Part shown: positions 2,729 through 39,130 of the stretch, in pieces
How the letters are laid out: each line of letters starts with the position of its first letter
Position numbering within the stretch: the first letter of the stretch is position 1
From: Octopus bimaculoides
Taxonomy: Eukaryota
Length of the DNA: 39,946 bases
Assembly (NCBI RefSeq): GCF_001194135.2
Contig: NC_068983.1
Location: forward strand, 123,198,303-123,238,248
Direction: 5' to 3'
The notes under the pieces: model-generated
What the model was told of the DNA's origin: nothing
What the model saw: the letters and a program-made list of their open reading frames with translations, nothing else
Databases searched by the model: none
Made by a program: the position numbers and the translations under genes

Positions 2729-2923
2729 ATGTCTTCAAGTTGCTTTCTTCGACCACTTCCTCTCTCCATGTTTCTACTCATCTCATTCTCCCTTGTATAT
2801 TTGGTCTTTGATGCATATTCAGTCTACAAGATTCCATTTCGTCTTCTTCCACGGAAAACTGAGCATGACCGAAATCGTGACTATTCTCGGTGGCCAACCT
2901 ACAAGCACATGAACTTTAATAAT
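2729..2923 (+). CDS. Exon 1 (first coding): MSSSCFLRPLPLSMFLLISFSLVYLVFDAYS...HMNFNN, with hydrophobic segment
   Basis: ATG in ccatcATG context, 65 open codons, donor gtaagt at 2924 (phase 0 matches exon 2). Upstream pyrimidine tract with AG at 2698-2699 or 2709-2710. No conserved motif anchors it, so it is less certain than the core exons. Confidence 0.75.
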
Positions 2924-5900: not shown

Positions 5901-8467
5901 NNNNNNNNNNNNNNNNNNNNNNNNNNNNNNNNNNNNNNNNNNNNGCGCACCCACCCCCACTACTAACTTGGTCACCCAGATAGCGGAAGCTATCGACTAC
6001 CTCTAGTTTTTCTCCCTGGAATGAGATAGAAGTTGTTTCCTGTTTGTTTACAGTGTTTATTGCACCTGAACATCTGCCACATACAAAAACTAACTTCGTA
6101 GTTAATCTGCCTTTGATATTGCTGCACCTCTTATGTGTCCATAGCTTGCACCGGGTACATCTTATAGAGTTACTACCTACTCCTTTACTGCATACTGGAG
6201 TAGGTAGTAACTCTATATATATATATATATACATACACTCACATTCACTAATAAATGCACACACACACACATATAGTTTACATTTGTATGTTTCAGGAAT
6301 GGTTCAAGTTACACTGTTGGAACAATGAGAAAATTTCAATCTCTAATCTATATTCTGTCCTGAAGACACTAAAAATGTCTTCACTAAATGAGTGCAGGTA
6401 AGTTGATCTGTATATCTTCCTAGTGAACTTTTCTAAATGTTGACCTATCTGTCATTGCTTCTACTTGTGCTTCTTTATCTATTTCTTGCATCTTTTTTTT
6501 TTTTGTCTATTTGCCTATCTGTCTTTCTCTTCCTCTTTTTATCTCACTGTCTTTTTCAACGTATATTTAGCTATTTATCTGCATCTATCAGTGTATTCCC
6601 ACTGTCTGTATATTTGTGTATAGGATTAATGCATGTATGTACACATGCACATATATATACACATCAATCAGATGATTATATTTCACACCTGTGTAAAATT
6701 ACCATTTATTTACTATACATATATTTGTTCATTTTTACATATATATATGATGATGACACGCATGTATCTTAACATCCGTTTGCAGATGTATGGGGTTGGC
6801 TTACCTGTTCTAATAAATCTTCAGTAATCAAGATTCCTATGTACTGACCAAATTCACATAACATAGTTACACCAATATCTCTAAATAGATACAACATGCC
6901 TTGACTGTTATACTATACAAACAGCCGTATTGCATGATTCTCTTGTGTGTGGATTTTAGTGAATCTGCTTTGGTTTAATTACATTTCTATTTTTTAAATA
7001 CCTATTTCTCTCTCCATCAGAGAACTGTACGACAGAATCTCCAGTATATTCAGTGTAACTCAGAGGTCAGGTCAACTTGTGCTACCATCCCCATTTGTTG
7101 TGAAAGTGAGAAAATGGTTAGGTGGGAATCCATCATTATTTGCAGAAGCTAAATATCAGGTAAGTAAAATGTTTAAATGTCCAAGTGTATAGTGTGTATA
7201 TATATATATATATANNNNNNNNNNNNNNNNNNNNNNNNNNNNNNNNNNNNNNNNNNNNNNNNNNNNNNNNNNNNNNNNNNNNNNNNNNNNNNNNNNNNNN
7301 NNNNNNNNNNNNNNATAGTGTATATATACATATAGTATATATATATATATATATATAGTATGTTAAATATTCCAAGGAATTTCATTAACAAAGTATTGGT
7401 TTTGAAGTTTTCTTGCCAATATTTATCTCCATTAAGGCAGTGAGCTGACAGAATTGTTAGTGTGCTGAGCAAAATGCTTAGTAGTATTTTGTCTGTTTTT
7501 AAGTTCTGAGTTCAAATGCTGCCAAGGTTGACTTTACCTGTCATCGTTTTGGGGTTAGTAAAATAGATACCAGCTGAGTACTGGGCTCAATGAAATCAAC
7601 TTACCCCCTCACTTGAAATTACTGGCATTGTGCCAAAATTTAAAACCATTATTTATATCCATACACTGACATACATTTATATCAATATATGAGAAGGTGC
7701 TGAGAAGTTCATGGATTTGGGGAAAAGAAAATACAGGAGGATCTGGTTATTATGGTTTTAGTCAATATATTCCCCTCCCAGATTCACACACTTATTGCAG
7801 CAGTCCTTCAGGTGTTCTAAGCCCTGTAAAAGAACTCAGAAGGTTAGACTTTCAACCAGGCTTTTTGCAATACCCTTAAAGCCTGGAACTTTTTAACACC
7901 CGCGTACATGTGTGTGTGTGTTTCATAAGCTTCCTAATAGTTTCTATCTACCAAATTGCTCTTACATTGCTGTAGTAGAAGACACTTCCTTGCTGCACAT
8001 TAGGATCAAACCTGGAACCTTGTATTTGTGAATTGAACCAAGCAATCATGCCAGCATTCATTTACTCTCTGTTTAATACAATGATGCCTTCTGCTTGTCT
8101 TTTCTAGCACATCACTCTTGCCTTTAATGAATACACACGTGACAATACTATGTTTAATCCTCTTCGCTCAAAACGTCCTCTCCAGAAACCAAATCAACCA
8201 CAAAGAGAATAGTGAGTATCTATAGAGAATTGTTTTACTTGTCATCATCATCATTATTATGGTGGGGAGTTGGCTGAATCATTAGCATGTTGGACAAAAT
8301 GTTTAGCCACATTTCATCTGTCTATGTGTTCTGAGTTCAAATTCCACTGAGGACTTTACCTTTCACCCTTTCAGGGTTGTTAAAATAAGTACCAATTGAA
8401 CTCTGGGGTTAATGTAAACAATTTACCCTCTCCCCCTAAATTGCTGGCCTTGTGCCAAAATTTGTAA

Positions 8468-8501
<34 letters not shown>

Positions 8502-11500
8502 CATTATTATTATTATTATTACAGTGTAGAGCTAGCAGGATCATTAACATGCCGAGCAAAATGTTCAACAGCATTTTGTCTATACATTCTAAGTTCAAAT
8601 TCCACCAAGATTCAATTTTGCCTTTCATCCTTTTGAGATCAGACAAATAAGTACCAGTCAAGCACTGGGATCTATGTAAGTAACTAATCCCCTCTCCCAA
8701 AATTCCAGGCCTTGTGCCTGGCAGAATCATTAGCACACCAGGTAAAATGTTTAGCAGCATTTTGTTCATCTTTATGTTCAGAATTCAAGTGCCATTGGGG
8801 TGGACTTTGCCTTTCATCCCCTTTTGGGGTTGATAAAGTAAGTACCAGTTGAGTACTTGGGTTGATGTAATTGACTTACTCCTCCCCTGAAATTGTTGAC
8901 CTTGTGCCAAAATTTGAAACCATTATTACTATTATTATTATTTCCATTATTATTAAGGTTGTGAGCCGTGGAGGCGCAATGGCCCAGTGGTTAGGGCAGC
9001 GGACTCATGGCCATAGGATCACGGTTTCGATTCCCAGACCGGGCATTGTGAGTGTTTATTGAACGAAAACACCCAAAGCTCCACGAGGCTCCGGCAGGGG
9101 ATGGTGGTGAACCCTGCTGTACTCTTTCACCACAACTTTCTCTCACTCTTATTTCCTGTTTCTGTTGTGCCTGTAATTCAAAGGGTCAGCCTTGTCACAC
9201 TGTGTCATGCTGAATATCCCCGAGAACTACGTTAAGGGTACACATGTCTGTGGAGTGCTCAGCCACTTGCACGTTAATTTCACGAGCAGGCTGTTCCGTT
9301 GATCGGATCAACTGGAACCCTCGACGTCATAAGCGACGGAGTGCCAACAAAGGTTGTGAGCTAGTAGAATCATTAGTCATTATCATCATCACTTTTCCAT
9401 GTTTGCATGGATCAGATGGAATTTATTAAGGTAGATTTTCTATAGCCAGATACCCTTCCTATTGCCAACCCTCAACTGTTTCCAAACAAGGTAATATTTC
9501 CCCGTTGCCAGACATGTTTTCACAGAATATTGGAAATGAATGACAGTAAAAGTACCTTCCAGTATTTTCTTCTTGCATGCTACATTCTGAGTTCAAATCC
9601 TGACAAATAAACTTGGCTTTACATCCATTTGGCGGGGTTAGTCTAATTAACCCCTCCCATCAAAAATTGCTAGTTTTGTGCTTAAATTAGAAACTTTTAT
9701 TATTGTTATTTGTTTTGTTTTTGTTTTTTTGTTATTGTTATGATTAGGAAAATCATAAGAATATTGGATTTCTTCTGCCGCTTTACATTAAAATCCTGCT
9801 GTGGTCAACTTTAATTTTCATCTTTCTGGGGTTGATGAAATGAAGTACTAGTCAAATGCTGGAGTCCATATCAACTAAAGTCTCTTCCTAAAAAACTGTT
9901 GACCTTATATCTAAATCAGAAGCAATTATTATTATTAATGAGAGATGATACAATGTCATTAAGGATTTAATTACATTGAGTTTTAATTCTGTATGGAGTC
10001 TGGTTTGCCTTTTATTCAGCTGGGGGGAATTAAATCAATTACACTGCTCGCTCCATTGACATTTTGAGAGTTTGTTAAAGTGTCAGAAACAGTAAGACTA
10101 AATATGTCTTGCAATATTTTGTTAGGTCTCTTTATGTTTGATTTCAATTTACATTAAAAAAAAAAAATTATTATTTTTTATTTCTTTTGTTTTTTTTTTC
10201 CCCCCTGCAGTGTGGAAAAATTATCTGAGAAGACTGGTCAAAACTGTGACTTTTGTAAATATTCAAAGTAAGAAAATGTCTTCAAAATTATTTTCAGATA
10301 TTTTTGTTTTGTTTTTGTAGTTTTTTTGTTGTTTATTTGTTTTGTTGTTTTGTTATTTTTGTTCTTTTCATTTTTTTTTCTTTATATATGTCTGGTGTTG
10401 TGGAAATGGTTGTATCAGTAATGCATCAAACCAAATGCTTTATCTCTCAGCACCTTCAGTTTAAAATCTACCATGGATAATGAATTAAGGACTAGGAAAT
10501 ATTGAAGTACCAACATGGCTATAGCCTTTGGGCTGAAATGCATCAAAGAACAAAAGAATATATATATATGTGTTTGCATGTATGTAATGTATATATGTAT
10601 CTATGTATAAAATGCATATATGTATGTAATGTATATATGCATGTGATGTATGTATGAATGCATATATACATACACACATGCATACATATATACACACACT
10701 CACTCACCCACTCACTCACTCACTCACACATTCACTCACTCAGTGATACATTCTACAAAATGTGCCTTGTACCTTATCAAGAGAGATGTGAAAATTTTCA
10801 TTGCTGAGTAAGACATCTACCACATGGTTGTTCTTTAGTCTCATTTCAGCCCTGACTAAGCAGAACTATGATCAAAGATATTCCAACCTTGACCATTCCA
10901 TCTTTTTTTCGTATATCTGGGACTACATAGTCCAATATGCCCAGCCCATTTAAAAATTGTAGGGTATGATTTGAGGGTGATCTAGCATCTACTACTAGCA
11001 GGTTGCGTGAGTATGTAGTCTCTGTCATTGTCTCATATATATATATATATATACTAGCAGTATAGCCCGGCGCTGCTCGGGATTAAGTGCTTTATTTCAA
11101 ACCAAAATAAGTAACATCGACATCAGATTTGAGCGAAATCCGTTGAAATTGGTTTGGCTGAAAATGGTTTGCTGGCAATTTGATTGGGAAATCCCATAAG
11201 GAATCAGTTTATTGGTTATTTTCACTCATTGACTCTTTTTTTAAATGTTGCATTAGAGATCTGCATAGGAGAAGGTTGATCTGAAGGTTTGCATTGGGGA
11301 TCTGGATTGGAGTAACTTAGGAAAGCTTACCAACAACCTTAACCAAAAAATAAGGGGCCTGTCCCTTCTAGGTTAACTCTAACCCTAACCCCTAACNNNN
11401 NNNNNNNNNNNNNNNNNNNNNNNNNNNNNNNNNNNNNNNNNNNNNNNNNNNNNNNNNNNNNNNNNNNNNNNNNNNNNNNNNNNNNNNNNNNNNNNNNNNN

Positions 11501-17600: not shown

Positions 17601-19203
17601 TTATAAATATAAATTCTAAAGCTCAAATTTTATGGTTTATAAAACCATAATTTAAACCTATTTAAACTTGTCACATTTTTGCTCATCATCTTCAGACCTA
17701 CAATGAAATTAAGTACCATACCAAGAAGCACTACTTAGATCTGGTAGAGAAATCTCCTTGTTTACTTCTTTAACAGTCAAATCCAGTGTTATTTGTTTAA
17801 TCATTACTATTACTAACAGTAGAATCTGTCATCAAATCCTATCCACACAACCAGTTAAGTTCTTTGTAGTTTTGCAATTTACTGTCTTAACTGAATATAT
17901 CAACATTATCTAACACTATTAATATAATGAATGCAACAATGTTAATCATTTTTTACTTTACTTTCTCTTCTAGTTTTACTGCTGAAGATTTGTTTGGACG
18001 TATTGAATCAAAACACTCATTCACAGCTGCAAATGCCTTTAAATATGATGCATGGCATGCTTTAGTTATTACAAGGAAACATCATCCATTGAAATGGTCT
18101 GAAGATATATTTTTAGACTGTATGAAAGTAGCTAGAGAATGGTGAGTTTACTGTTTTCCTTGTAAATACATTCCTTCAAAGGTAAGTTAACCATCAACCA
18201 AAATTGTTATTTGTAGTTTGAATTTAAAATCCAGTGTAGCACACAACTTCATCAAATGCTTTAACACTTTGAAGTTTGATAAGAATCACTTAGTTTATAT
18301 GATGATGATGATGGACTCTCCTGTTGAAGACAGCATATGGGCATTCAGCTTTTGCGTAACAACCTGCACAAATGATCTGCTTATACTGATCAAATGTATG
18401 TACTGTACATTAGCTCACTTTCTCCATTAAATCAATGTTGTCTGAACAGGCACACAGTGTACCACATGTCAGGTGTCGAAGTGATTGCAGAGCAACATGA
18501 ATCGAAGTGTTTTTGCTCAACAACACAATGCACCACCCAGTCTAGGAATTGAAACCACAATCTTGCGATTATGAGTGCAACACCTTAATCACTTCGCCAT
18601 GCATCCTCAGAACATGATGATGATAATGATAATGGTCTCAAATTTTGCCACAAGGCCCACAATTTTAGGGGGAGGGATAAATCAATTACATTGATCCCAG
18701 TGTACAAATGGTACTTCTTTTATTGATCTTGATAGAATGAAAGGCAAAGTCAACCTCTGCAGGATTTGAACTTGAAACTTAAAGATGAACGAAATGCTGC
18801 TATGCATTTTACCCAGGATTCTGCCAGCTCTCTTACCTTAATAATAATGATTTCAAATTTTGGCACCGAACCAGCAGTTATTCTCATGTTATTTTGTGAT
18901 CACTTCGACACCTGACATGTGGTACACTGTGCACCTGCTCAGGCAACAGTGATTTGATGGAGGGAGTGAACTAATGAACAGCACATACATTTGATCATCA
19001 TAAACAAATCATTTGTGCAGGTTGTTTGGCAAAAGCCGAACACTTATACGTTGTCTTCGGTGGTAGAGTCCATCATATAAACATATAGTTTTTATTGAAG
19101 TGGATTGCACTGTGTTGACAAGCTTGCTCTTAAAATTCCTGTGTTTTAAATCAAAACTTGTTAGTTACTATAGTGACAACACTATCTATTTATCTTTCAC
19201 ATG

Positions 19204-22200: not shown

Positions 22201-25200
22201 ATTGCAGCTGAACACTTCAGTAATGATTATCCAGAAAGAAACTATTTCTCAGAAGTACTCTACATCCATTCAATGTTAGACTTGGCTTTCCATTATAAAA
22301 CTGCCGCTGCATTTGCTAATATTGTGAGTATCTTTGCATTTCTCTTCTTTTTTATTCTTTTTTAATTTCTCCTTTTTGTGTGTTTTTCTTTTCTTGTTTT
22401 TAATATCAGTGCAATTCAGATCCGTTCAGTTGTCAATTATGTACTCAAAGAAATGCAGTCCATGTTGCTGAAACAACAAATTGTAGAAGTGAATTAATCT
22501 ATATCAAATGACAATCGAAGAGCTGGAACAAATACCACAAGACATTTTATCTCTACCAATTCTGTCAGTCCACTGTTATAATAATAATTTCTGACTTCAA
22601 AATAAGAATGAAGCATATAGTTGATTATGACTACTACTTATATGAACACCCTTGAGAGATGAAGACAAAGTCAATTTCATTGAGAGTTGAACTGACTATA
22701 GACAGATGATGCTAGATATTGTAAGATCCAGAAATGATGAACCAATGAGGAAGTCTTTATGTGGTCATTCAACCTGCTAGAAATATCAGTCAGATAACTT
22801 AAACCATAACTTAATATCTTAAGAAAGAAAAGTCAAACTATATAATATAGTTCTAGATACACTGTGTAGCAAAAAGTAATTATAGCTGCTACACCATTGG
22901 TCATAAGTTTGCTTGATCTTAACTGACCTTTGGTAAACAATTTCATCAGCAATATTTCAATAACATAATGTCATAACAGTAACAAAAATATTTTTACTCT
23001 GGAGTTGTTGATGATATTAAGAGTATTTACTGACTGAAAGAAGAAAACCTGCACAACAAAGACTAGCAGTTTTCTCTGTTGCTATGTGGACAAAAATATA
23101 TAAGTGACAAAATGCTGAAAAACCTGTCCAATCCATACCAGTATGGGGAAAAAATAGATGTGAAATGATGAGGATGTAATAACATGATATTGTTTCACAT
23201 AATATTTCTTCTTGAAATTTTGCAAAGTAAGCAATAACATCTCAACTACTGAAAGCTGTTTGTTCCTTATAGGGACCCAGGGAACCTACACAACCAACCT
23301 CTGCATAATAGTTTGTTACATTATAGTCAAAGCCCAGACTATAGCATTTCATGTCTGAGGAGCCAATTACATGAGATACTTTTCTTTGACAATCAAGTGT
23401 GTCAACATTTATTATTATTATTATTAGGTATTAGTGTTAGTCTATAATAATTTAATGATTATTTTTTTCCAGCTGATATTGACAAATTCAAATCACAACA
23501 GAATACACTCTAATATAGCTGTGACAATAACTGCTTCCATAGCACCAAGCTCTATGCTGAGTTAGAAAATCCCTGCACTGTGTTTGTATCTAACATTAAC
23601 TAAGTTTATCATTTGATATATTTTTTAATTCCATCATCACCATTTAACATTGACTTACATACTGGAATGGGTTAGATAGCTGGATAGTTTAACTGGATCC
23701 AATTAGTAATGGGACTGCATTGTGCTCCGGTGTCTTCTTTAGCGTAGTTTCTATGACTAGATGCCCTTCCTAATGTCAGCTGCTTTCTTTTTACATGGTC
23801 CTTACAATCAAAGGAAGATAAAAGAGAGATGGTACAATGATTTGGACTGGGTGATGAGAGAGAAATGGGATTTATAGATATGCAAATGTGGTAGTAGGGA
23901 GAGTAGCAAAACAGAAGCTATTAGAGGAAATAGTATGGAAGAGACAGGAGAAGGGATTTGTGTCAGAGATTAGTGAAAAAGTGGAGACAGAATGGAAAGA
24001 TGATTAAGTGGGTTGTGTCAAGGTTGTCCAGGAGCATCCTACATTAGAAGTTTGAGTATGAATGAATGGTACATGGGAAAGCTGAACAAGAAAGGTAGAA
24101 GTAGATGAGGGTGGCAAGAGATGCAAAGAATCATTGAAAGGGAAGTATGAGAGTTGTGGGTGTAGATGAGAGAAGCTTGTTGAGGTAGTTGAGAAGCTAT
24201 AAGATGACAATGAGGGAATAATGGGGTAGTCCAACCAATGCCAGCATGGAAAAACGGATGGGAAATGATGATGAAGATGTTGATGAGCGTACAGTGGGCG
24301 CAGTAAGAACAATCAAGAAAAAAATAGTGTGGCAGGCACCTTAAAGGTAAGGGAGAAGAAGAGAGTGTGAATCCAGAGAAAGTATCCTATGTGAGGAGGC
24401 TGTGGAAAGGGGACAGCAAAAGAAGTGGGTAGAGGGAGCACTAAAAAGTTATATATTTCCTGTTTTGATTGCAAAGCTAAAATATGATAATAGGTGCAAA
24501 ATGTCAATTGTCCTCCAACTATTCAATTAATTGTCCCTGTGCTGTACTAAGATTCGCTTGAGTGAACTCGTTACAATTACACTACAATATCAGCAGGTTA
24601 AGTAATCAAATATTTCAACCTCATTAATAAAAAAAAAAAATAAGTACTTAATTTTGAAAAATGGTTTATAATGCTCACAGAACATTATCTTTTAATAGAG
24701 AACTAAAAAAGTTGCTGTGAATATTAGGCCTCGTTATCTCTGAACACTCCTCCCCCCCCCCCCATCCACATATATATCAAAACTACATCACAAAGACTTT
24801 AAATCAGAGAAATACTTCAGCTATTAGTTACTAAGACTCTACGGAGCTCAAAGAAGTCCCACATTGGAATACTGCTAACATAACATAGATGCTGCTGCAC
24901 ATCAAGGAGTGAAACCTAAAGAAGGCCAGTCATCTGATTTAACATGTTTCACCCACCAATTTGCTACAACCAGGGGCTCACAGAAGTATGGTTTCTTTTT
25001 TTTTTGCGGGGGGGGGGGCTTCTTCTACAACTACTATAATGGTTTCTGCTGTTTGCATACTCCTATCATGCAGGTTGATCTGATCCACTCATCTGTCCTC
25101 CTCTTGTCACCCTTATTATGTAACATCTCCCAGAACCTTCATTGAATACATCATCATTCATTCCAATCCAGGACTACAACCCTCTAGAACTCCATCCTTG

Positions 25201-26167
25201 CCCACATTCTTCTATAGATGTTAAGGTTAAACATCAACTGAATCAGTCTCTGAAAGGCCTGCAATGGTCATAGGCACTACCTCTCTTCTAACTTATTAAA
25301 AGAAAGCAAAAACACAAGATCATATATATATATACTAAGAGTAGTTTATATTTTGTGACATAGAAACTTTTCTCAAGGGCGTTAGTGGCATAAATGAAAG
25401 GATATAGCTTTTATTCTGTATCATTTGTTAAATACAACTGAAAGAAATTCTGTTTAATGTCCTAGGTTATTTTATTTTGTTTTTCATTTGTCTTATTTAA
25501 ATTTTCATTTAGACGCCAAAGAAAGATAATGAAATTGTTGTTCTTGGTGAAGCCCCCAACGATGATTTTTTTAAACTGTTGTACTATGTACTAAGAGGTA
25601 AACAGCTTTATTTTATTAAATGTCTGTTTGAAATGAGCTATTAATAAGATTATTATTTTTTTGGACTATTCATCTCATTGTTAGAGATGAAACACTTTTC
25701 TGTATATATATCTACATTGTTTTTGTTGATTTGATCTCTTATTTCTATTTGGTGCCTTATTTTTGGCAGTCTACATAGTACCAGACTGCTTTATTTCATT
25801 TGTTCTTTTTTTTAACCCTAATTTATCAGTCAAATCGTCCAACCCATGCTAGGCATGGAAAGCAGACGTTAAACAATGATGATGATATATATATATATAT
25901 CTGTAAAAATATGTGACACTTATTCGGTAGCAATGATAAAACTCTGAGTTTTGGATGCCAGGGTGGGAGCCCACGCCAACATCTCTTCAGTTATCCAGCC
26001 ATTGAAAATTCCTGTGAAAAATGATGTTGGCGTGGGCTCCCACCCCGGCATCCGAAACTCAGAGTTTTATCATGGCTACCGAATAAGTATCACATATTTT
26101 TACAGATAAATTCCTTTATTTACATAATATCAAGGCCCCTTTCTTTCTTTTGTTGTCCTTCCTATCA

Positions 26168-30483: not shown

Positions 30484-30514
<31 letters not shown>

Positions 30515-32062: not shown

Positions 32063-32119
<57 letters not shown>

Positions 32120-35100
32120 GGTGGCCCAAGAGTAGCTTAACCTGTTGAAAGCCACTGACCAGATTTGTGGGTGGTGTAAGGTCCCCTCCCGACCCAGAGT
32201 AACGTGGTGGTGGAACAAGGAGGTAGACAGGGCTATTAGACAAAAGAAACAGGCTTGGAAGGACTGGAAGAATGGTGGTAGCAGGGAATTGTACCAATGT
32301 GCCAGAAGGGAGGCTAGGCGACAGGTTTATTTAGCCAGAGGGGAAGCAGATAAGAAAAGATTTACCANNNNNNNNNNNNNNNNNNNNNNNNNNNNNNNNN
32401 NNNNNNNNNNNNNNNNNNNNNNNNNNNNNNNNNNNNNNNNNNNNNNNNNNNNNNNNNNNNNNNNNNNNNNNNNNNNNNNNNNNNNNNNNNNNNNNNNNNN
32501 NNNNNNNNNNNNNNNNNNNNNNNNNNNNNNNNNNNNNNNNNNNNNNNNNNNNNNNNNNNNNNNNNNNNNNNNNNNNNNNNNNNNNNNNNNNNNNNNNNNN
32601 NNNNNNNNNNNNNNNNNNNNNNNNNNNNNNNNNNNNNNNNNNNNNNNNNNNNNNNNNNNNNNNNNNNNNNNNNNNNNNNNNNNNNNNNNNNNNNNNNNNN
32701 NNNNNNNNNNNNNNNNNNNNNNNNNNNNNNNNNNNNNNNNNNNNNNNNNNNNNNNNNNNNNNNNNNNNNNNNNNNNNNNNNNNNNNNNNNNNNNNNNNNN
32801 NNNNNNNNNNNNNNNNNNNNNNNNNNNNNNNNNNNNNNNNNNNNNNNNNNNNNNNNNNNNNNNNNNNNNNNNNNNNNNNNNNNNNNNNNNNNNNNNNNNN
32901 NNNNNNNNNNNNNNNNNNNNNNNNNNNNNNNNNNNNNNNNNNNNNNNNNNNNNNNNNNNNNNNNNNNNNNNNNNNNNNNNNNNNNNNNNNNNNNNNNNNN
33001 NNNNNNNNNNNNNNNNNNNNNNNNNNNNNNNNNNNNNNNNNNNNNNNNNNNNNNNNNNNNNNNNNNNNNNNNNNNNNNNNNNNNNNNNNNNNNNNNNNNN
33101 NNNNNNNNNNNNNNNNNNNNNNNNNNNNNNNNNNNNNNNNNNNNNNNNNNNNNNNNNNNNNNNNNNNNNNNNNNNNNNNNNNNNNNNNNNNNNNNNNNNN
33201 NNNNNNNNNNNNNNNNNNNNNNNNNNNNNNNNNNNNNNNNNNNNNNNNNNNNNNNNNNNNNNNNNNNNNNNNNNNNNNNNNNNNNNNNNNNNNNNNNNNN
33301 NNNNNNNNNNNNNNNNNNNNNNNNNNNNNNNNNNNNNNNNNNNNNNACGATCGTATCCGATTAACTAAAGACTTGTTTTGTTTATGCCTTTCCCTCCGTT
33401 TTTTTGTTCTATGTGTGCCATAAATATTGCCATCCGTTTAGAGAAAAATTTGTAGTTTAGAATCAGTAGTTCTTTGACTGCTATTTCTAAATTTTCAGTA
33501 TGTTGGAGAAGCAACTCAATGCTAATCCCTGTATATTTATGATGATAAATGGTTTTACCGATAAAGGTTTTTTCATACTGAACTACTTGGCAAAATTGTT
33601 AATTATTAATTCTATTATTAATTGACGATTCCCTGCCCTTATTCTTGTGTATATATATATATATTGTAGCTTTGTGTCTATGTTTGTCCCCCACTTCCAC
33701 TTAATAACCGGTGTTGGTGTGTTTACATTCACTAACTTAGTAGTTCAGTAAAAGAGGTCAATAAAAAATAGTACCATGCATAAAAAAGAAAGAATTGGTA
33801 TCAATTTGTTCAATTAAAATTCTTCAAAGCATAACCCATTGTGGTCGCAGTCTGATGACTGAAAAAGATAAAAGACCCACTAAATTTCTTAGTAAAACTT
33901 TAAGCTAAGGGAGATGTTATGACATAGCTATAAACGTCTGGTGTAAAATGGTATTACACAAATAAATAGTTGGTTGTGGTTATCTAAAAATGACCTATCG
34001 CAGAAATATATGTTGACACAGAACGCACTCCATACATAGGTACAATACTCAGTATTCAATGTTCAACTTCTGACTGTTAAACCAACACACATCGAACTAA
34101 CATGGTTAACCAACATGTTCGAAGTAACACCATCAACTACACCCTGACAGTTCACTCTTCTTATTTATTGTAATTGGTTAGTCCACCTTCAGTCACATGG
34201 GGGTGTTCAGGTTTCTCCCATAACAGGAGGTAACTTTTGTTCACCTATCTCAGTAATACTATGGTACTGAAACCTCTCACGGTCGCTTTAACTGCTAGAA
34301 ATGCTTTTAAATCCGATCCTAATGCTGGATATTCAAGAAGCAAATGAAGGGCAGGTTTTCAATCCCGGGATCATCCTGGTTCCAAGAAGGTATAATATGT
34401 CTGTCTAGAGCAAATGTAGACTGAGGTACAGAGACAGTTACACTTTTATTAATATAGATACACACATACATATGCATGTATACACACACATATACACATA
34501 TATGTTTATTTCACTTCCAAATCACACCTGGCATCTTTAAAAAACATGACACATTAGATAAGAAGATTATTACAACTGGAATGTTTCTACTTTTAGATAT
34601 GCTTCAAGTAACAAAATAGGTTCATTTCATACTCAGTATATTGTGATTAAGAATTTCCTTCCTACTTTCAAACCCTTCAACTGAGCATTGTATTTTCTCT
34701 TTCCAGCTTATATTGATGACATGGAAAAACTTTGTTTTAGTATGGCTATTGCATTTCCAAGTATTGTAAGTATCACATTTACCATTTAAACTGAATCTGT
34801 ATGTTTATTTTGGGAATCCATTTTGTTATTTTACAGATTTCCATATTATTCCAAGCATAACATTCATGGCCTATCTCAGCTCATTTGTCTTTTAAGGCAT
34901 AGGATCATTTTGCTTTTAAAAACAAAACTTGCCTCTTTTGAAGGTTTTGCCAGCTCAAGATGATTTTCTAATTTCTTACACTTTGGTTTATTATGGTTGT
35001 CTTCACTAATTGTATTTATGCAGAGTTGAATGCTTTTTGGTATCTTCAAAGCTTTTGCAGAGTGAGAATGTTATATGTATCAATGGTGGAAAAAATTCTT

Positions 35101-36281: not shown

Positions 36282-36325
<44 letters not shown>

Positions 36326-38227
36326 TCAGGCTTCTTTCAGTTTCCATCTACCAAATCCACTCACAAGGTTTTGGTCAGCCTGAGGCTAGAGTAGAAGACA
36401 CTTGCCCAAGCTGCCATGCAGTGGGACTAAACCCAAAACCATGTAGTTGGGAAGCAAGCTTCTTACTACACAGACACATTGCACCTAAAATATATTTTTA
36501 TGATTTTTATATCGGTGGTGAGAGCAATGAACATTGGAGGTTATCATGGTGGTGTTAAATCAATAGTCAAATTTATTGCAGCTGCTCATTAAAACTGGTT
36601 TTGTTGATTTTTGGTATTTTAATGTCTTGTCTGCAACTATATTTTAATTTATTCCCTTTTCATTTTTTCCTTTTTCTTTTTAGTTGAAGGAGGATGTCAC
36701 AGGTCGCTTACCTGTCTATGCACGGCTGATATCTCGAGGTACAGTTGGTGAAGTACGCTCTGATATCAGCTCCCTGGAGCTATTTGCGGTAAGCTAAAGA
36801 ATAGATTTCATCCTTCATTGTATTGTTTGTTTTCTTAATTTGTCTGAGCTTTTTGATGTTCTTTGCATTGAATATGGTAACACTAACTTATTTTAATTTT
36901 TAATTCTGATGACATTGATTAAATTAAAAGCTTTTATTTTAGTTTGTTGGGTTTATCCCTTCATGGCATTCTATATCTCATTATGTCAGTGCTGGCTGGT
37001 TTTCTTTGGTATTAATCATCATCGTCGTTTAACGTCCGTTTTCCATGCTAGCATGGGTTGGACGATTTGACTGAGGACTGGTGAAACCAGATGGCTACAC
37101 CAGGCTCCAATCTGATTTGGCAGAGTTTCTACAGCTGGATGCCCTTCCTAACGCCAACCACTCAGAGAGTGTAGTGGGTGCTTTTACATGTCACCCGCAC
37201 GAAGGCCAGTCAGGCGGTACTGGCAACGGCCATGCTCAAGATGGTGTATTTTATGTGCCACCTGCACAAGAGCCAGTCCAGAGGCACTGGCAAGTGTTTG
37301 AAAAACAAATCTGCTCCTGGTTTGGCTGCCAGTCTCTTACAGATGACATTTCTGCACTTAATACTGTATGCCAATGAATCAGTTATCACTTTTACAGTGA
37401 TGTTGCTCTATAATACTTAACTAATGATACCATCCCAGTGAGAGAACCTCTACATGGCTGCTTAGAATTAGCAGCTAATCTCCCTACAAAACACACTCTG
37501 TTGTCTTTATAATGGAAGGTTATTTTGCTGAGTTAGTAGTGCAAAATTTTCAAAATGTATCATATTCTGTTAGAAAGTAACCTAAAATGAAGATTAAATT
37601 ATATCATATCATCATCAACATTGTTGTCATCATTTAACGTCCATGTTTCATACTGGTTTGGGTTGGACTGTTTGACAGGATCCTATGAATTGAAGGACTG
37701 CGCTGTGACATGGTTTCTATGGTTGGATGCCCTTCCTGATGCCAACCACTTTACAGTATTTACTGAGTGCTTTATTCGTGCCACCAGCAGTAGTGGAGTT
37801 GCATTGCAATATGCAAAACTACAAACTCTGAGGGGGATGGTTTATGCTAGCAAATGAGGGATGCCCTGGTACAAAAATTAAGAAATTTGCAGAAAGGAAT
37901 TAGACATTTTCCTCTCCCCAATACTAGATGAACCAACAGTCCAACATGAGGTACAGACGAGGGCAGTGGAATCAAACTCAGTTATATATCAAATATACCA
38001 ACAGTTGGGAAAATGGCACATACAGGAGTAGTGATGTGAAACACCCAAACTGAGAAAGTTAGGAAGACCATGGAGGTGCTCCAGCATGACCACAGCTGCA
38101 TGGCTGAAATGAAAGAATATATATATATACAAATGATATATATATATTATATATATATAAATAATATATATATATATGTAAATAATATATATATTATATA
38201 ATGTATAATATATATATATATATATAT

Positions 38228-38265
<38 letters not shown>

Positions 38266-38571: not shown

Positions 38572-38641
<70 letters not shown>

Positions 38642-39130
38642 ATATATTTATTTATCAATAGATAGAGATTTATTTATTGATTTTATTGGATTGATCCACA
38701 TATGAGATGGAGTTGCTCTTAATTACCATTCTGTAATTATAACACATGCTCTAGAAACTGATAATTTTAATAAATCAAGAATTTGTTATACGACATACTT
38801 GGCTATGTTGTATATACATAACCCATGCTAGCATGGAAAATAGACATAAAATGCTGATGATGATGATACACACTTAAACACAAATACATTCAAGCATATG
38901 ATATTACTACCTCTAAGTCAATGTTGTTTGTTATGATATTATAAATATTTAAATGTTTGAACTTGTAACTGTCTAGTGATTATCCATTTTTGTAATGACT
39001 GAGAGATTTTTACTTCAATACATTCTTGATTTTTTTATTTTTACAGGCATCCAATGTAAATGTCGACCCATTTCAAGTGGCTACCAAAGTCCGGAATTTT
39101 ATTGCAAAAATGACCAGTGCTAAAAGTTAA
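2729..39130 (+). CDS. 12-exon gene, 456-aa GalT/HIT-superfamily protein with N-terminal hydrophobic segment. join(2729..2923,6297..6397,7021..7159,8108..8211,10211..10267,17974..18141,20921..21051,22181..22323,25513..25597,34707..34765,36684..36788,39047..39130)
   Basis: Manual splicing. Every intron has a GTRAG/GTAAA-type donor and a pyrimidine-rich AG acceptor; end phases 0,2,0,2,2,2,1,0,1,0,0 match; 1371 nt with no internal stop. Motifs in GalT order: R165-S-K-R-P169, C192-D-F-C195, H227, H285-P-H-M-H289, C-terminal SLELFAASNVNVDPFQVA. Family assignment is by motif recall, not a database search. Confidence 0.9.
3465..3780 (+). mobile_element. Degenerate tRNA-derived SINE
   Basis: tRNA-like head remnant, then gtgttgtgttcttgagcaagacact...tgctccagttcactcagct core shared with 21550-21780 and (minus) 18490-18605. 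Confidence 0.6.
4456..4617 (-). mobile_element. 3' end of (GAT)n-tailed RTE-type retroposon
   Basis: catcatcatcattatcgtttaacgtccgctttccatgctagcatgggttggac...; the same tail recurs at least nine times in the window. Confidence 0.8.
4619..4853 (+). mobile_element. RTE-clade LINE ORF2 C-terminal fragment
   Basis: MLRWMCNVSVHTRQSVSTLREKIDLRSISCGVQERRLRWYGHVARMDED, then ...EGTCGRGRPRKTWDEVVKH after a frameshift. Confidence 0.85.
5081..5355 (-). mobile_element. (GAT)n-tailed retroposon 3' region with GTGCC-N3-GGCAC-type modules, cut by gap
   Basis: Close match to 26835-27130 and 37016-37292. Confidence 0.85.
5945..6210 (-). mobile_element. RTE-clade LINE fragment (post-RT Cys/His-rich region)
   Basis: VCSKGVGSNSIRCTRCKLWTHKRCSNIKGRLTTKLVFVCGRCS...LEVVDSFRYLGDQVSSGGGC; homologous to 28400-28660. 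Confidence 0.85.
6297..6397 (+). CDS. Exon 2: EWFKLHCWNNEKISISNLYSVLKTLKMSSLNEC(R)
   Basis: tttcag acceptor, gtaagt donor, phase 0 to 2. Confidence 0.8.
7021..7159 (+). CDS. Exon 3: ELYDRISSIFSVTQRSGQLVLPSPFVVKVRKWLGGNPSLFAEAKYQ
   Basis: ttctctctccatcag acceptor, gtaagt donor, phase 2 to 0. Confidence 0.88.
7434..7650 (+). mobile_element. Degenerate tRNA-derived SINE ((ATT)n-tailed family)
   Basis: aaggcagtgagctgacagaat head, gagttcaaat B-box-like, gactttacctgtcatc...ccagctgagtactgg core, tgtgccaaaattt end. Confidence 0.7.
8108..8211 (+). CDS. Exon 4: HITLAFNEYTRDNTMFNPLRSKRPLQKPNQPQRE(Y)
   Basis: tcttttctag acceptor, gtgagt donor. RSKRP resembles the GalT R-x-x-R-P motif. Confidence 0.9.
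8261..8950 (+). mobile_element. Head-to-tail array of three degenerate (ATT)n-tailed SINE copies
   Basis: Repeated gagttcaaattcc...gactttgcctttcatcc...aagtacca...tgtgccaaaattt units at about 8261-8470, 8525-8720 and 8720-8930, with (ATT)n after the first and third. Confidence 0.75.
8968..9349 (+). mobile_element. Full-length tRNA-derived SINE with 12-bp TSD
   Basis: Head with A box (tggcccagtggtt) and B box (ggtttcgattccc); TSD AAGGTTGTGAGC at 8955-8966 and 9350-9361; inverted copy at 16566-16946. Confidence 0.92.
10211..10267 (+). CDS. Exon 5 (57 nt, phase 2-2): VEKLSEKTGQNCDFCKYS(N)
   Basis: Long T/C tract ending ctgcag, gtaaga donor. CxxC sits where GalT has its CPFC zinc knuckle. Confidence 0.88.
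11054..12289 (-). mobile_element. Non-autonomous Helitron-like element (two gaps; 5' end not seen)
   Basis: On the minus strand a GC hairpin (cccgagcagcgccggg, 11066-11081) lies 8 nt before a terminal CTAG followed by T, in an (AT)n target. Internal (CCCTAA)-like and (TTTC)n repeats. Continuity across gap 11397-11684 is assumed. Confidence 0.5.
13990..14155 (+). mobile_element. tRNA-derived SINE 5' half (family with internal TA/TG microsatellite)
   Basis: ggcgcaggagtggctgtgtggtaag...ggttcattcccactgcgtggcaccttgggcaagtgtcttctactatagc; minus-strand relative at 36325-36484. Confidence 0.8.
14690..14932 (+). mobile_element. 3' half of the same SINE family
   Basis: ttgacaaccgatgctggtgtgtttacgtccccgtaacttagcgg...ggtgctccagc...gcagtcaaatgactgaaaca; relatives at 31295-31450, 33670-33875 and (minus) 35435-35640. 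Confidence 0.75.
15582..17574 (-). mobile_element. Internally deleted, degenerate piggyBac transposon (SINE nested inside)
   Basis: Minus-strand remnants: acidic N-terminal stretch (~17040-17120), DGIVVAE*KDRHDVLMLSMKH, YNTMKQGTDISEQMASYFTPLRKSIR*, and Cys-rich end KRCVDCYS...AYCAECTDNPSLCLAYFSKKH* (stop 16016-16018). Ends TTAA-CACATTGGCTCC (15582-15597) and GGAGCCAATGCG-TTGA (17559-17574). Confidence 0.85.
16566..16946 (-). mobile_element. Full-length tRNA-derived SINE with 12-bp TSD
   Basis: Reverse complement of 8968-9349 with about 25 substitutions by eye; TSD TGTTTCATAGAT at 16552-16563 and 16947-16958. Confidence 0.92.
17974..18141 (+). CDS. Exon 6: FTAEDLFGRIESKHSFTAANAFKYDAWHALVITRKHHPLKWSEDIFLDCMKVARE(W)
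   Basis: ctttctcttctag acceptor, gtgagt donor; lies within track ORF 17927..18145. Confidence 0.92.
18439..18840 (-). mobile_element. Two adjacent degenerate SINEs (18439-18605 and about 18634-18840)
   Basis: Reverse complements of the families at 3465/21550 and 7434/8261. Confidence 0.6.
19147..19293. repeat. Compound microsatellite (CT)n(ATCT)n (core 19206-19293); one of many simple repeats, e.g. (TA)n 2333-2366, (ATT)n 8470-8520, (TTTC)n 12045-12145, (TC)n 13204-13270, (TA)n(GATA)n 38105-38263
   Basis: Direct reading. Confidence 0.9.
20921..21051 (+). CDS. Exon 7 (catalytic motif): YEKVHSVDIRYKLPTLLWDLLPHASASQVHPHMHINLLPDRYY(G)
   Basis: cattacag acceptor, gtaaat donor; HPHMH at 21009-21023. 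Confidence 0.92.
21550..21780 (+). mobile_element. Degenerate tRNA-derived SINE
   Basis: ggagacacatggcttagtgattagg head, ttgattcctgg B-box-like, tgctccagtctactcagct core. Confidence 0.65.
22181..22323 (+). CDS. Exon 8: VIENWRIAAEHFSNDYPERNYFSEVLYIHSMLDLAFHYKTAAAFANI
   Basis: tttccttacag acceptor, gtgagt donor, phase 1 to 0. Confidence 0.9.
23633..24500. mobile_element. Old RTE-type 3' regions (degenerate tail on minus at 23633-23790, purine-rich segment, second tail on plus at about 24230-24290)
   Basis: Degenerate gatgcccttcctaat and ccatgc...gcatggaaaa...gatgatga motifs. Confidence 0.45.
25513..25597 (+). CDS. Exon 9: TPKKDNEIVVLGEAPNDDFFKLLYYVLR(A)
   Basis: ttttcatttag acceptor, gtaaac donor, phase 0 to 1. 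Confidence 0.88.
25827..25886 (+). mobile_element. Short 5'-truncated (GAT)n-tailed retroposon end
   Basis: cagtcaaatcgtccaacccatgctaggcatggaaagcagacgttaaacaatgatgatga. Confidence 0.8.
25898..26108. mobile_element. Hairpin MITE, 86-bp TIRs, 39-nt loop, TA-flanked
   Basis: 25898-25983 versus reverse complement of 26023-26108: 4 mismatches, no indels. Confidence 0.9.
26835..27130 (+). mobile_element. (GAT)n-tailed retroposon 3' region with two hairpin modules
   Basis: ...gtgccggtggcacgtaaaagcacc...ggttggcgttaggaagggcatccagctgtagaaac...gatgatgatga. Confidence 0.88.
27135..29505 (-). mobile_element. Degenerate RTE-clade LINE: RT domain, post-RT region and probable 3' UTR
   Basis: GKSTTDAIFQVRQLQ...LYLAFINLEKAFNRV...GVHQHSVLSPFLF...QYTDDL (YADD-like, about 29100-29117), EVVDSFCYL, HGSETW, RLCWFGHV, GRGKPRKTW; stops and frameshifts. 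The assignment of 27135-27870 as UTR is inferred. Confidence 0.9.
30690..31292 (+). mobile_element. Longest (GAT)-tail-family copy, about five hairpin modules
   Basis: GTGCC-N3-GGCAC-like units near 30891, 30959, 31024, 31064 and 31128, followed by the shared tail (tail repeat itself degenerate). Confidence 0.75.
31847..32064. mobile_element. Tc1/mariner-like MITE with about 30-bp TIRs and TA ends
   Basis: tataaggtggtccaaaaataggtttacagt versus reverse complement tagagggtggcccaagagtagctttacagt. Confidence 0.7.
32137..32367 (+). mobile_element. RTE-clade LINE fragment (region upstream of RT), cut by gap
   Basis: LNLLKATDQICGWCKVPSRPRVTWWWNKEVDRAIRQKKQAWKDWK...YQCARREARRQV. Confidence 0.85.
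34707..34765 (+). CDS. Exon 10: YIDDMEKLCFSMAIAFPSI
   Basis: ttttctctttccag acceptor, gtaagt donor, phase 1 to 0. Confidence 0.85.
35435..36484 (-). mobile_element. Minus-strand SINE split at its microsatellite by a LINE insertion
   Basis: 3' half 35435-35640 and 5' half 36325-36484 match 14690-14932 and 13990-14155. Confidence 0.75.
35662..36283. mobile_element. BovB-like RTE fragment with inverted 5' part
   Basis: Plus strand about 35980-36283: VLTTLLYGS..W..., CGYSLKDRISNTNLL...LHWAGH..RMSDRRIP. Minus strand 35935-35662: LEQTKWRL...HTCNM...GFKCHIRH and 3' end. Confidence 0.75.
36684..36788 (+). CDS. Exon 11: LKEDVTGRLPVYARLISRGTVGEVRSDISSLELFA
   Basis: Long T tract ending ttttag, gtaagc donor, phase 0-0. 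Confidence 0.9.
37016..37292 (-). mobile_element. (GAT)n-tailed retroposon 3' region
   Basis: Close match to 5081-5355 and 26835-27130. Confidence 0.88.
37610..37860 (-). mobile_element. Older (GAT)n-tailed retroposon 3' region
   Basis: catcatttaacgtcc...ggatgcccttcctgatgccaaccac. Confidence 0.65.
38473..38578 (-). mobile_element. Short (GAT)n-tailed retroposon end abutting a long (TA)n
   Basis: (CAT)n cgtttaacatccgctttccatgctagcatgggttgg...ccaggctccaat. Confidence 0.85.
39047..39130 (+). CDS. Exon 12 (last coding): ASNVNVDPFQVATKVRNFIAKMTSAKS*
   Basis: ttttacag acceptor, TAA at 39128-39130. With exon 11 it resembles the GalT C-terminal G-F-E-L...I-N-x-V-x-P-E-x-A-A pattern. Confidence 0.88.
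   Translation, partial: ASNVNVDPFQVATKVRNFIAKMTSAKS

What the first reader, a model, noticed from the sequence alone, without database searches (positions are those of the whole stretch)
2729..39130. Hidden 456-aa GalT-fold enzyme gene that I cannot match to a named animal gene
Seen: 12 exons splice in frame. Established: GalT-branch enzymes (Gal-1-P uridylyltransferase, ADP-glucose phosphorylase) carry R-x-x-R-P, a CxxC zinc knuckle, a His-containing beta strand, A-S-x-x-H-P-H and a C-terminal E-L...N-x-V-x-P segment. This protein has all of these in order (R165-P169, C192/C195, H227, A281-H287, E426 onward). It does not read like canonical animal GALT, whose motif is HPHCQ. Inference: an uncharacterised nucleotide or nucleotide-sugar processing family. 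Eleven introns argue for long residence in the genome.
Basis: partly seen in the sequence, partly recalled or inferred. Interest (0 to 1): 0.85.

Follow-up and report, generated by a model that had tools for sequence, protein, structure and literature searches.

The report
Membrane-anchored GalT-like enzyme gene, octopus
This is a real, intact 12-exon octopus gene for a membrane-anchored enzyme with the fold of galactose-1-phosphate uridylyltransferase; its family is conserved from bacteria and protists to most invertebrates, was not found in vertebrates, and has no known substrate.

Summary
Twelve + strand exons (2729-39130), all with GT-AG borders, splice into a 1371-nt reading frame of 456 aa. 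All eight N gaps lie in introns. The protein aligns without internal gaps to the Octopus sinensis (98%) and Argonauta (82%) orthologues, so no exon is hidden in a gap. Ten of the 11 intron positions and phases match amphioxus exactly, and nine match Lottia.

The fold claim also holds. An AlphaFold model (pLDDT 92) matches Arabidopsis ADP-glucose phosphorylase At5g18200 best (Foldseek E 7e-12, TM 0.70), then E. coli and human GALT.

It is not canonical GALT. No Pfam or NCBIfam model reaches its cut-off, and every named homologue is called 'uncharacterized'.

New points:
- Eukaryotic members carry an N-terminal type II signal anchor and an extra Cys pair, so the catalytic domain is probably luminal or extracellular.
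- The third zinc ligand is H235 (or H236), not H227.
- The third motif residue is His in molluscs, an annelid and arthropods, and Gln in most other members.
- The family holds about 500 clusters, mostly bacterial.

The likely mechanism is a covalent His287-NMP intermediate acting on a nucleoside-diphosphate compound. The substrate is unknown. This is a new variant of a known kind, of moderate interest.

The parts
2729..2923 (+). Coding exon 1 (aa 1-65), with the start codon at 2729. Contains the signal-anchor helix.
   Evidence: ATG at 2729, donor AAT|gtaagt. Aligns to orthologues.
2753..2809 (+). Hydrophobic transmembrane segment, aa 9-27 (PLPLSMFLLISFSLVYLVF). Probable type II signal anchor.
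   Evidence: Mean Kyte-Doolittle hydropathy over 19 residues is 2.06, and it is the only such segment. Helical in the AF2 model. A TM segment is present in 42 eukaryotic homologues, and 35 of them have the more positive N-terminal flank.
6297..6397 (+). Exon 2 (aa 66-99). Holds C72 (6315-6317) and C98 (6393-6395), a Cys pair found only in the eukaryotic, membrane-anchored members.
   Evidence: C72 is Cys in 40 and C98 in 39 of the 42 eukaryotic sequences; the columns are absent from bacterial members.
7021..7159 (+). Exon 3 (aa 99-145). Family-specific N-terminal extension that precedes the GalT core.
   Evidence: Perfect donor CAG|gtaagt. Conserved also in bacterial members.
8108..8211 (+). 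Exon 4 (aa 146-180). Contains FNPLRSKRP; R165-P169 lies at 8165-8179.
   Evidence: R165 is invariant, R168 is 75/77 and P169 is 76/77. Aligned with the RAKRP of At5g18200 and E. coli GalT.
10211..10267 (+). Exon 5 (aa 180-199). Zinc knuckle C192-D-F-C195 at 10245-10256.
   Evidence: Aligned with C63/C66 of At5g18200. Present in all eukaryotic members.
17974..18141 (+). Exon 6 (aa 199-255). Contains invariant T201 and N219, conserved R208 (74/77), H227 (18056-18058), and the probable third zinc ligand H235/H236 (18080-18085).
   Evidence: H235 is His in 50 of the 51 sequences that have the CxxC and in 4 of the 26 that lack the full pair; those 4 keep C195 only.
20921..21051 (+). Exon 7 (aa 255-299). 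HIT motif A281-S-Q-V-H285-P-H287-M-H289 at 20997-21023. H285 is the zinc ligand and H287 the nucleophile.
   Evidence: S282, H285 and H287 are invariant in 77 of 77. Aligned with the HSHSQ of At5g18200 and the HPHGQ of E. coli GalT.
22181..22323 (+). Exon 8 (aa 299-346). Start of the second half-domain.
25513..25597 (+). Exon 9 (aa 347-375). Contains conserved TPKKDNE.
   Evidence: K350 is 67/77 and E353 is 75/77.
34707..34765 (+). Exon 10 (aa 375-394).
36684..36788 (+). Exon 11 (aa 395-429). Contains conserved R412-G413, D421 and E426-L427 (E426 at 36777-36779).
39047..39130 (+). Exon 12 (aa 430-456 plus stop TAA at 39128-39130). D436-P437 lies at 39065-39070.

Best explanation
This is an intact, conserved protein-coding gene, the orthologue of Octopus sinensis LOC115209428. 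It encodes a single-pass type II membrane protein.

Shown:
- Its large C-terminal domain has the double-HIT fold of class I GalT and ADP-glucose phosphorylase.
- It keeps the invariant HIT-motif histidines H285 and H287 and the conserved RxxRP motif.

Inferred from the known GalT / At5g18200 mechanism:
- A structural zinc is held by C192, C195, H235 (or H236) and H285.
- H287 attacks the alpha-phosphate of a nucleoside-diphosphate-X substrate, most likely an NDP-hexose.
- A covalent NMP-His287 intermediate forms, and X-phosphate leaves.
- The NMP is passed to inorganic phosphate (phosphorylase) or to a sugar-1-phosphate (transferase).
- H289, which is Gln in most of the family, steadies the phosphate.

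Inferred from the anchor, the charge bias and the eukaryote-only Cys pair: the reaction takes place in the lumen of the secretory pathway or at the cell surface.

The nucleotide, the leaving group and the acceptor are not known.
For: Gene:
- 12 GT-AG exons give 456 aa.
- 98% and 82% identical, gap-free orthologues.
- Intron positions and phases are shared with amphioxus (10 of 11 exact) and Lottia (9 of 11 exact).

Fold:
- AF2 model pLDDT 92.3.
- Foldseek top hits are 2h39/1z84 (At5g18200), E 7e-12, TM on target 0.70, then E. coli and human GALT.
- The family profile against PDB finds 1z84 first at E 8e-4, with RAKRP, CxFC and the HxHxQ block aligned.

Catalytic apparatus:
- R165, T201, N219, S282, H285 and H287 are invariant in 77 sequences.
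- CxxC and H235 co-vary: 50 of the 51 sequences with CxxC have His at 235; only 4 of the 26 that lack the full pair do, and those keep C195.
- The roles of the first and second His and of Gln are as summarised for class I GalT and At5g18200 in bioRxiv 10.64898/2026.09.13.751320.

Topology:
- One N-terminal TM segment.
- 35 of 42 eukaryotic homologues have the more positive N-terminal flank.
- C72 and C98 occur only in the anchored eukaryotic forms.

NDP-sugar lead: the bacterial homologues P0068 and P0069, among the best-scoring bacterial hits, which keep the CDFC knuckle, sit directly upstream of a trehalose-phosphatase gene. In P0068 this is followed by a GMPPB-like NTP-transferase, PGM/PMM and GT20 (OtsA-type). 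Another homologue lies near a GH15 gene.
Against: - No biochemical or expression data exist for any member.
- Sequence identity to the structural matches is only 12-14%, so substrate cannot be transferred from them.
- Other bacterial homologues lie in purine (purF-purM-purH, purB-purA-guaB), NAD-salvage and histidine operons. That points to nucleotides rather than sugar nucleotides.
- The octopus motif is HPHMH, the form seen in hydrolytic HIT proteins, not HxHxQ.
- The octopus protein's own charge bias across the TM segment is weak (+2 against +1). Disulfide formation by C72/C98 was not checked in the model, because no coordinates were available.
Confidence: 0.7

Rival explanations
1. Same fold and chemistry, but the substrate is a plain nucleotide conjugate rather than a nucleotide sugar. 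Candidates are a dinucleoside polyphosphate, adenylyl-sulfate, or an NAD/ADP-ribose-type or purine-pathway nucleotide. The animal enzyme would then be an ecto- or luminal nucleotide phosphorylase or hydrolase.
For: Bacterial homologues sit between purH and pncA plus a QRPTase-type gene, directly after purB-purA-guaB, and beside hisD in a his cluster. Protostome members, including octopus, have HxHxH, as HIT hydrolases do. There are weak sub-threshold matches to Ap4A_phos_N in 12 of 77 members.
Against: The pur/NAD-context bacterial members lack the CxxC knuckle and are more distant from the animal proteins; the purB-purA-guaB neighbour (P0108) keeps CDFC but was the second-weakest hit. P0068 and P0069, among the best-scoring bacterial hits, keep CDFC and lie in a trehalose / NDP-sugar operon. 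The structural match to yeast Apa2 is poor (TM 0.27-0.42) compared with At5g18200 and GALT. The conserved E426 region aligns by eye with the sugar-contacting GYEMLAE segment of E. coli GalT; this comparison is from my knowledge and was not tested.
Confidence: 0.25
2. It is simply the octopus orthologue of canonical GALT, or of GDPGP1, and so is already characterised.
For: UniRef names two homologues 'Galactose-1-phosphate uridylyltransferase'. The fold is the same.
Against: The Pfam GalT model is matched by only 1 of 77 members, and only weakly (E 0.0013). TIGR00209 scores 17 bits against a cut-off of 102. Identity to human GALT is 12-13%. The protein has an N-terminal anchor and a roughly 80-aa extra domain that GALT lacks. 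No vertebrate member was found although vertebrates have GALT and GDPGP1. No GDPGP1-type Pfam family appears.
Confidence: 0.02
3. The model is an artefact: a chance chain of ORFs, a pseudogene, or a chimera created by scaffolding across gaps.
For: There are eight assembly gaps inside the span. One gap, at 28665-28722, is flanked by a 220-bp perfect duplication, so the assembly is locally unreliable.
Against: The frame is open through all 12 exons. It is colinear with orthologues, with no indel. The invariant residues (R165, T201, N219, S282, H285, H287) are all intact. Intron positions are conserved across phyla. All gaps are intronic.
Confidence: 0.02
4. It is a non-catalytic nucleotide-binding or receptor-like protein that only keeps the fold.
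For: No activity is known. The membrane anchoring is unusual for this superfamily.
Against: The nucleophile His, the zinc-ligand His, R165, N219 and S282 are invariant across bacteria and eukaryotes. That pattern is expected for a working active site.
Confidence: 0.05

Closest known systems
Arabidopsis At5g18200 ADP-glucose phosphorylase (PDB 1z84, 2h39)
   Same: It is the best structural and profile match. It shares the double-HIT fold. The RxxRP motif, the CxxC knuckle, the 'AGAS..HxHxQ' block and the zinc ligands line up.
   Different: Identity is only 12-14%. At5g18200 is soluble, with no membrane anchor, no eukaryote-specific Cys pair and no roughly 80-aa N-terminal extension. The third motif residue is Gln there and His in octopus. 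The substrate of the octopus protein is unknown.
Class I galactose-1-phosphate uridylyltransferase (E. coli GalT 1hxp/1hxq, human GALT 5in3)
   Same: The fold matches (TM on target 0.60-0.65). The HPH core of the motif is shared. A ping-pong mechanism via a His-NMP intermediate is expected.
   Different: The protein fails the Pfam and NCBIfam GalT models. The motif is HPHMH, not HPHxQ. It is membrane-anchored. It forms a separate family that also has its own bacterial members.
Other GalT-branch families: Ap4A phosphorylase Apa1/2, DUF4921, DUF4931 (PDB 4qvu)
   Same: There are weak sub-threshold Pfam matches in 7-12 of 77 members. Foldseek gives E about 1e-6.
   Different: The superposition with Apa2 is poor (TM 0.27-0.42). 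None of these families reaches its gathering score.
Small HIT proteins (Hint, Fhit)
   Same: The first half-domain aligns to Pfam HIT (aa 210-295, E 0.077). Both have an HxHxH motif and an 'H-phi-L-V-I-x-K-x-H' strand.
   Different: Those are single-domain homodimers of about 110-150 aa. This protein is a fused double domain with a zinc knuckle.

Membership tests
HIT superfamily, GalT branch | Two tandem HIT-like half-domains in one chain (GalT fold) | tested here: met
   The AF2 model (pLDDT 92.3) was searched with Foldseek. The top 19 hits are At5g18200 and class I GalTs, with E 7e-12 to 2e-7 and TM on target 0.60-0.70 over about 280-355 alignment columns.
HIT superfamily, GalT branch | [quoted passage not shown] | tested here: met
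   H285 and H287 are invariant in 77 of 77. The third position is Gln in 48 and His in 29 members; octopus has HPHMHIN. Octopus itself therefore departs from the Gln, but the family as a whole keeps it.
HIT superfamily, GalT branch | Structural zinc site: CxxC, a His after the central strand, and the first motif His | tested here: met
   The residues are present: C192, C195, H235/H236 and H285. CxxC aligns with C63/C66 of At5g18200. CxxC and H235 co-vary in 50 of 51 sequences. Actual metal binding cannot be tested here.
HIT superfamily, GalT branch | N-terminal R-x-x-R-P nucleotide-binding motif | tested here: met
   R165 is invariant, R168 is 75/77 and P169 is 76/77. It aligns with the RAKRP of At5g18200 and E. 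coli GalT.
Canonical GALT (class I GalT; Pfam PF01087/PF02744, NCBIfam TIGR00209) | Scores above the curated family thresholds | tested here: not met
   There is no GalT Pfam hit for the octopus protein. PF01087 is matched weakly by 1 of 77 members, at E 0.0013. TIGR00209 scores 17.1 bits against a cut-off of 102.1 for one bacterial member and gives nothing for the others.
Canonical GALT | UDP-hexose : hexose-1-phosphate uridylyl transfer activity | not testable with these tools
   This needs an enzyme assay.
ADP-glucose phosphorylase (At5g18200 type) | Orthology or close sequence relationship to At5g18200 | tested here: inconclusive
   It is the best PDB match, but only at E 8e-4 by profile and 12-14% identity. 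It is a sister family at best. Phosphorolysis of ADP-glucose cannot be tested here.
Ap4A phosphorylase (Apa1/Apa2) | Matches to the Ap4A_phos_N / ATP_transf models and the monomeric Apa2 architecture | tested here: not met
   There are only sub-threshold Ap4A_phos_N hits, in 12 of 77 members, with best E 0.0017. Foldseek TM is 0.27-0.42 with rmsd of 18-19 Å.
Type II (signal-anchor) membrane proteins of the secretory pathway | A single N-terminal hydrophobic segment with the more positive flank on the N-terminal side | tested here: met
   Mean Kyte-Doolittle hydropathy is 2.06 for aa 9-27. Of 42 eukaryotic homologues, 35 have the more positive N-terminal flank and 3 the opposite. Actual localisation cannot be tested here.

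The most novel reading that the evidence does not exclude
This would be the first GalT/HIT-type nucleotidyl-transfer enzyme that works inside the secretory pathway or on the cell surface. One possibility is that it phosphorolyses or interconverts luminal nucleotide sugars. Another is that it removes or installs nucleotide or sugar-phosphate groups on glycans or proteins. It would be an ancient eukaryotic activity, present in choanoflagellates, filastereans, a ctenophore, cnidarians, most invertebrate phyla and euglenozoans, that vertebrates have lost or replaced.
Probability: 0.3. Interest if true: 0.7.

Novelty: new variant of a known kind. Interest (0 to 1): 0.5.

Why it matters
The characterised GalT-branch enzymes I know of (GALT, ADP-glucose phosphorylase, GDP-sugar phosphorylases, Ap4A phosphorylases) are soluble proteins of central nucleotide-sugar or nucleotide metabolism (from my knowledge, not tested here). 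This family adds a membrane anchor and probably a luminal or extracellular location. It is conserved with its intron structure across bilaterians and has about 500 sequence clusters, yet no Pfam or NCBIfam model and no published function. Finding its substrate would define a new reaction in invertebrate, and possibly trypanosomatid, secretory-pathway or ecto-nucleotide metabolism. It would also explain what vertebrates do instead. For genome annotation, the family deserves its own profile and a better name than 'uncharacterized LOC'.

Tried and rejected
- A Pfam scan of single exon peptides and of a 124-aa concatenate found nothing.
- The first homologue search, with that 124-aa fragment, found no candidate because too few 5-mers were shared. 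The full 456-aa model was needed.
- phmmer of the protein against PDB found nothing. Only the family profile reached At5g18200.
I therefore used the alignment headed by the 98%-identical O. sinensis orthologue for the exhaustive search and for structure prediction.
- The weak Pfam hit to 2H-SAK (aa 113-153, E 0.008, below cut-off) is treated as chance.
- A search for the upstream 5' exon encoding 'MRRL' of isoform X3 in window 1-2700 found no match.
- Literature searches for locus names of family members, and for a characterised membrane-bound GalT-like or HIT enzyme, found nothing relevant.
- Bacterial gene neighbourhoods were expected to give one conserved partner. They instead gave four different contexts, so they do not fix the substrate.
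- I considered and rejected H227 as the zinc ligand.
- I did not test whether canonical GALT exists at a separate octopus locus. No octopus genome search is available here.

Full report
**1. The window and the gaps**

The window is AT-rich eukaryotic DNA, 30-40% GC outside the N-containing stretches. It has eight runs of N: 5356-5944, 7215-7314, 11397-11684, 12290-12919, 14336-14652, 28665-28722, 29506-30290 and 32368-33346. The last two were not in the program's list.

**2. Rebuilding the gene**

I found FNPLRSKRP at 8108-8209 and ASASQVHPHMH at 20871-21062 on the + strand.

I then read the splice sites and enumerated AG...GT-bounded open segments of the right phase and length. This gave one consistent chain of 12 exons:
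- 2729-2923
- 6297-6397
- 7021-7159
- 8108-8211
- 10211-10267
- 17974-18141
- 20921-21051
- 22181-22323
- 25513-25597
- 34707-34765
- 36684-36788
- 39047-39130

All borders are canonical, with pyrimidine-rich acceptors. The CDS is 1371 nt, giving 456 aa plus TAA. All eight gaps lie in introns 1, 3, 5 and 9.

**3. Is it real and complete?**

The 456-aa protein finds 109 homologues. The best is Octopus sinensis 'uncharacterized protein LOC115209428 isoform X3' (98% identity). Next is the 456-aa Argonauta hians protein (82%).

In the alignment there is no internal indel against either. So no exon is hidden in an assembly gap, and exon order and strand are right across all gaps.

I mapped the Lottia gigantea and Branchiostoma belcheri genes onto their genomic loci. 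I then placed the introns of all three genes on a common alignment:
- Ten of the 11 octopus introns have the same column and phase in amphioxus. The eleventh lies 2 columns away, in an indel-rich loop.
- Nine are exact in Lottia, one is 3 columns away, and one is absent.

The O. sinensis isoform has 13 extra N-terminal residues. In the window the corresponding in-frame sequence follows an acceptor-like site at 2699/2700 and contains no ATG. A 5' exon therefore probably lies upstream. I did not find it in the window.

**4. What the protein is**

No Pfam model reaches its threshold. The only suggestive hit is HIT (aa 210-295, E 0.077). Across 77 family members there are only weak, sub-threshold hits, to Ap4A_phos_N, HIT, DUF4921, DUF4931_N and GalP_UDP_transf. 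All of these belong to the HIT/GalT clan. NCBIfam gives nothing usable.

A profile of the 77 sequences searched against PDB sequences finds At5g18200 (1z84) first, at E 8e-4. The RAKRP motif, the C-x-F-C knuckle and the AGAS-x-x-H-x-H-x-Q block are aligned. Next come a small HIT protein, yeast Apa2 and E. coli GalT.

AlphaFold2 on the alignment, headed by the 98%-identical orthologue, gives a confident model (pLDDT 92.3, pTM 0.86). Foldseek against the PDB returns At5g18200 ADP-glucose phosphorylase first (E 7e-12, TM on target 0.70). E. coli, human and other class I GalTs follow (TM on target 0.60-0.66). Apa2 superposes poorly. The GalT fold is therefore confirmed, at 12-14% sequence identity.

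**5. Active-site anatomy**

In 77 aligned members R165, T201, N219, S282, H285 and H287 are invariant. R168, P169, R208, W273, E353, R412, G413, E426 and D436 are nearly so.

The CxxC knuckle is present in all eukaryotic members and in some bacterial ones, including most of those that score best against the animal proteins. It has been lost in a large bacterial subgroup. H235 co-varies with it: His is found in 50 of the 51 CxxC sequences and in only 4 of the 26 that lack the full pair (those 4 keep C195).

So the zinc tetrad is C192/C195/H235/H285. The HMM alignments put the GalT and At5g18200 ligand one residue further on, at H236, which is also His in octopus.

By analogy with class I GalT and At5g18200 (roles summarised in bioRxiv 10.64898/2026.09.13.751320), H287 is the nucleophile that forms a covalent NMP-enzyme. 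The third motif residue contacts a phosphate. That residue is His in the molluscs (one sea-slug sequence excepted), the annelid Owenia and the arthropods aligned. It is Gln in all but one of the deuterostomes, in a bryozoan, in Capsaspora, in ichthyosporeans and in all bacteria.

**6.

The protein starts with a single hydrophobic helix (aa 9-27, mean hydropathy 2.06). All but one of the 43 eukaryotic homologues examined have such a segment. In 35 of the 42 that do, the N-terminal flank is the more positive one, which is the signature of a type II signal anchor. Bacterial members lack it.

Two cysteines, C72 and C98, are conserved only in the anchored eukaryotic forms. This fits a disulfide in an oxidising compartment. 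The catalytic domain is therefore probably luminal or extracellular. This is an inference; nothing here shows localisation.

A roughly 80-aa extension (aa 66-145) precedes the GalT core. It is shared with the bacterial members.

**7. Distribution**

An exhaustive profile search finds 505 clusters (at 50% identity) at E <= 1e-30, and 1252 at E <= 1e-10. Most are 350-390 aa and bacterial in size.

Named eukaryotic members come from:
- molluscs, annelids, a bryozoan, a priapulid, rotifers and an acanthocephalan
- crustaceans, a myriapod, a pycnogonid, springtails, dragonflies or damselflies, crickets and locusts
- echinoderms, hemichordates and amphioxus
- cnidarians and a ctenophore
- a choanoflagellate, Capsaspora and ichthyosporeans
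- Trypanosoma conorhini and a diplonemid

Apart from the three UniRef names 'Galactose-1-phosphate uridylyltransferase' (two proteins) and 'HIT domain-containing protein' (one), all are called 'uncharacterized', 'hypothetical' or 'unnamed'. No vertebrate, dipteran or nematode protein appeared. That suggests loss but does not prove it. Literature searches found no paper on any member.

**8. Clues to the substrate**

Bacterial neighbourhoods are not uniform.
- P0068 and P0069, among the best-scoring bacterial hits, keep the CDFC knuckle. They are translationally coupled to a trehalose-phosphatase gene. In P0068 this is followed by a GMPPB-like NTP-transferase, PGM/PMM and a GT20 (OtsA-type) gene.
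- Another homologue is near a GH15 gene.
- Chloroflexi-type members without the knuckle lie between purF-purM-purH and pncA plus a QRPTase gene.
- One follows purB-purA-guaB.
- One sits beside hisD in a his cluster.
- One context is uninformative.

All of these are nucleotide or nucleotide-sugar contexts, but they do not single out a substrate. I rank an NDP-hexose substrate first, because of the trehalose / NDP-sugar context of P0068 and P0069 and the best structural match. A nucleotide-conjugate substrate, such as Ap4A, APS or an NAD type, comes second.

**9. Verdict**

Observation: confirmed. Interpretation: supported, with corrections (the zinc ligand, the membrane anchor, the wider distribution, and the existing 'uncharacterized' annotation in a sister species).

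It is not canonical GALT and not an orthologue of a characterised gene. It is a distinct, unnamed family within the GalT branch of the HIT superfamily, so a new variant of a known kind. Interest is moderate. The fold and chemistry are familiar. The membrane-anchored, probably luminal setting, the broad conservation, the apparent loss in vertebrates and the complete lack of functional data make it a worthwhile target for enzymology.

Noticed in passing
window 28445-28664 and 28723-28942: A 220-bp, 100% identical direct duplication lies directly on either side of the 58-N gap (28665-28722). It is most likely an unmerged assembly overlap rather than biology. It lies in intron 9 and does not touch the CDS.
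   Followed up: partly
window 8968-9348 and 16566-16946: A 381-bp inverted repeat (93% identity) sits in introns 4 and 5, on either side of the 57-nt exon 5 that encodes the CxxC zinc knuckle. Skipping exon 5 would keep the reading frame (TA|T gives Tyr). Flanking inverted repeats of this kind can favour exon skipping or circular RNA.
   Followed up: no
window 27930-29477, minus strand: A LINE remnant lies antisense in intron 9. The ORF at 28848-29477 matches Pfam RVT_1 (E 1e-15) and has a YTDD motif. The ORF at 27930-28289 carries the typical C-terminal tail '...GRGKPRKTWDEVV'. Related tails occur at 4597-4946 (+).
   Followed up: partly
window 4432-4618, 5064-5355, 25826-25900, 26846-27129, 31050-31295, 37015-37293, 38452-38577: A SINE-like interspersed repeat of about 280 bp is present in at least seven copies, in both orientations, at 88-96% identity. 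All copies are intronic. (TA)n and (TATAC)n-type microsatellites are abundant throughout.
   Followed up: partly
window 2700-2728: An acceptor-like site (ttttctctag|TAT) lies 29 nt before the ATG. The in-frame sequence YYKLKRTSI resembles the N-terminal extension MRRLYYNLKRLRI of O. sinensis isoform X3. A 5' exon, and possibly an alternative start, probably lies upstream. I did not find it in the window.
   Followed up: partly
window 21021-21023 (H289); alignment A2: The third residue of the HIT motif is His in the molluscs (one sea-slug sequence excepted), the annelid Owenia and the arthropods aligned. It is Gln in all but one of the deuterostomes, in a bryozoan, in Capsaspora, in ichthyosporeans and in all bacterial members (29 His against 48 Gln). 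This is a lineage-level switch between the 'hydrolase-type' and the 'GalT-type' motif.
   Followed up: partly
L001, L003, L004, L005 (bacterial loci): In Chloroflexi-type metagenome contigs the homologue has lost the CxxC zinc knuckle. It sits in a conserved purF-purM-purH-(130-aa ORF)-X-pncA/QRPTase-plsY arrangement. That suggests a nucleotide or NAD-related role for that subgroup.
   Followed up: partly
P0182, P0189, P0243 (homologues elsewhere): Family members exist in Trypanosoma conorhini, a diplonemid and the ctenophore Bolinopsis. The eukaryotic distribution is therefore wider than Holozoa.
   Followed up: no
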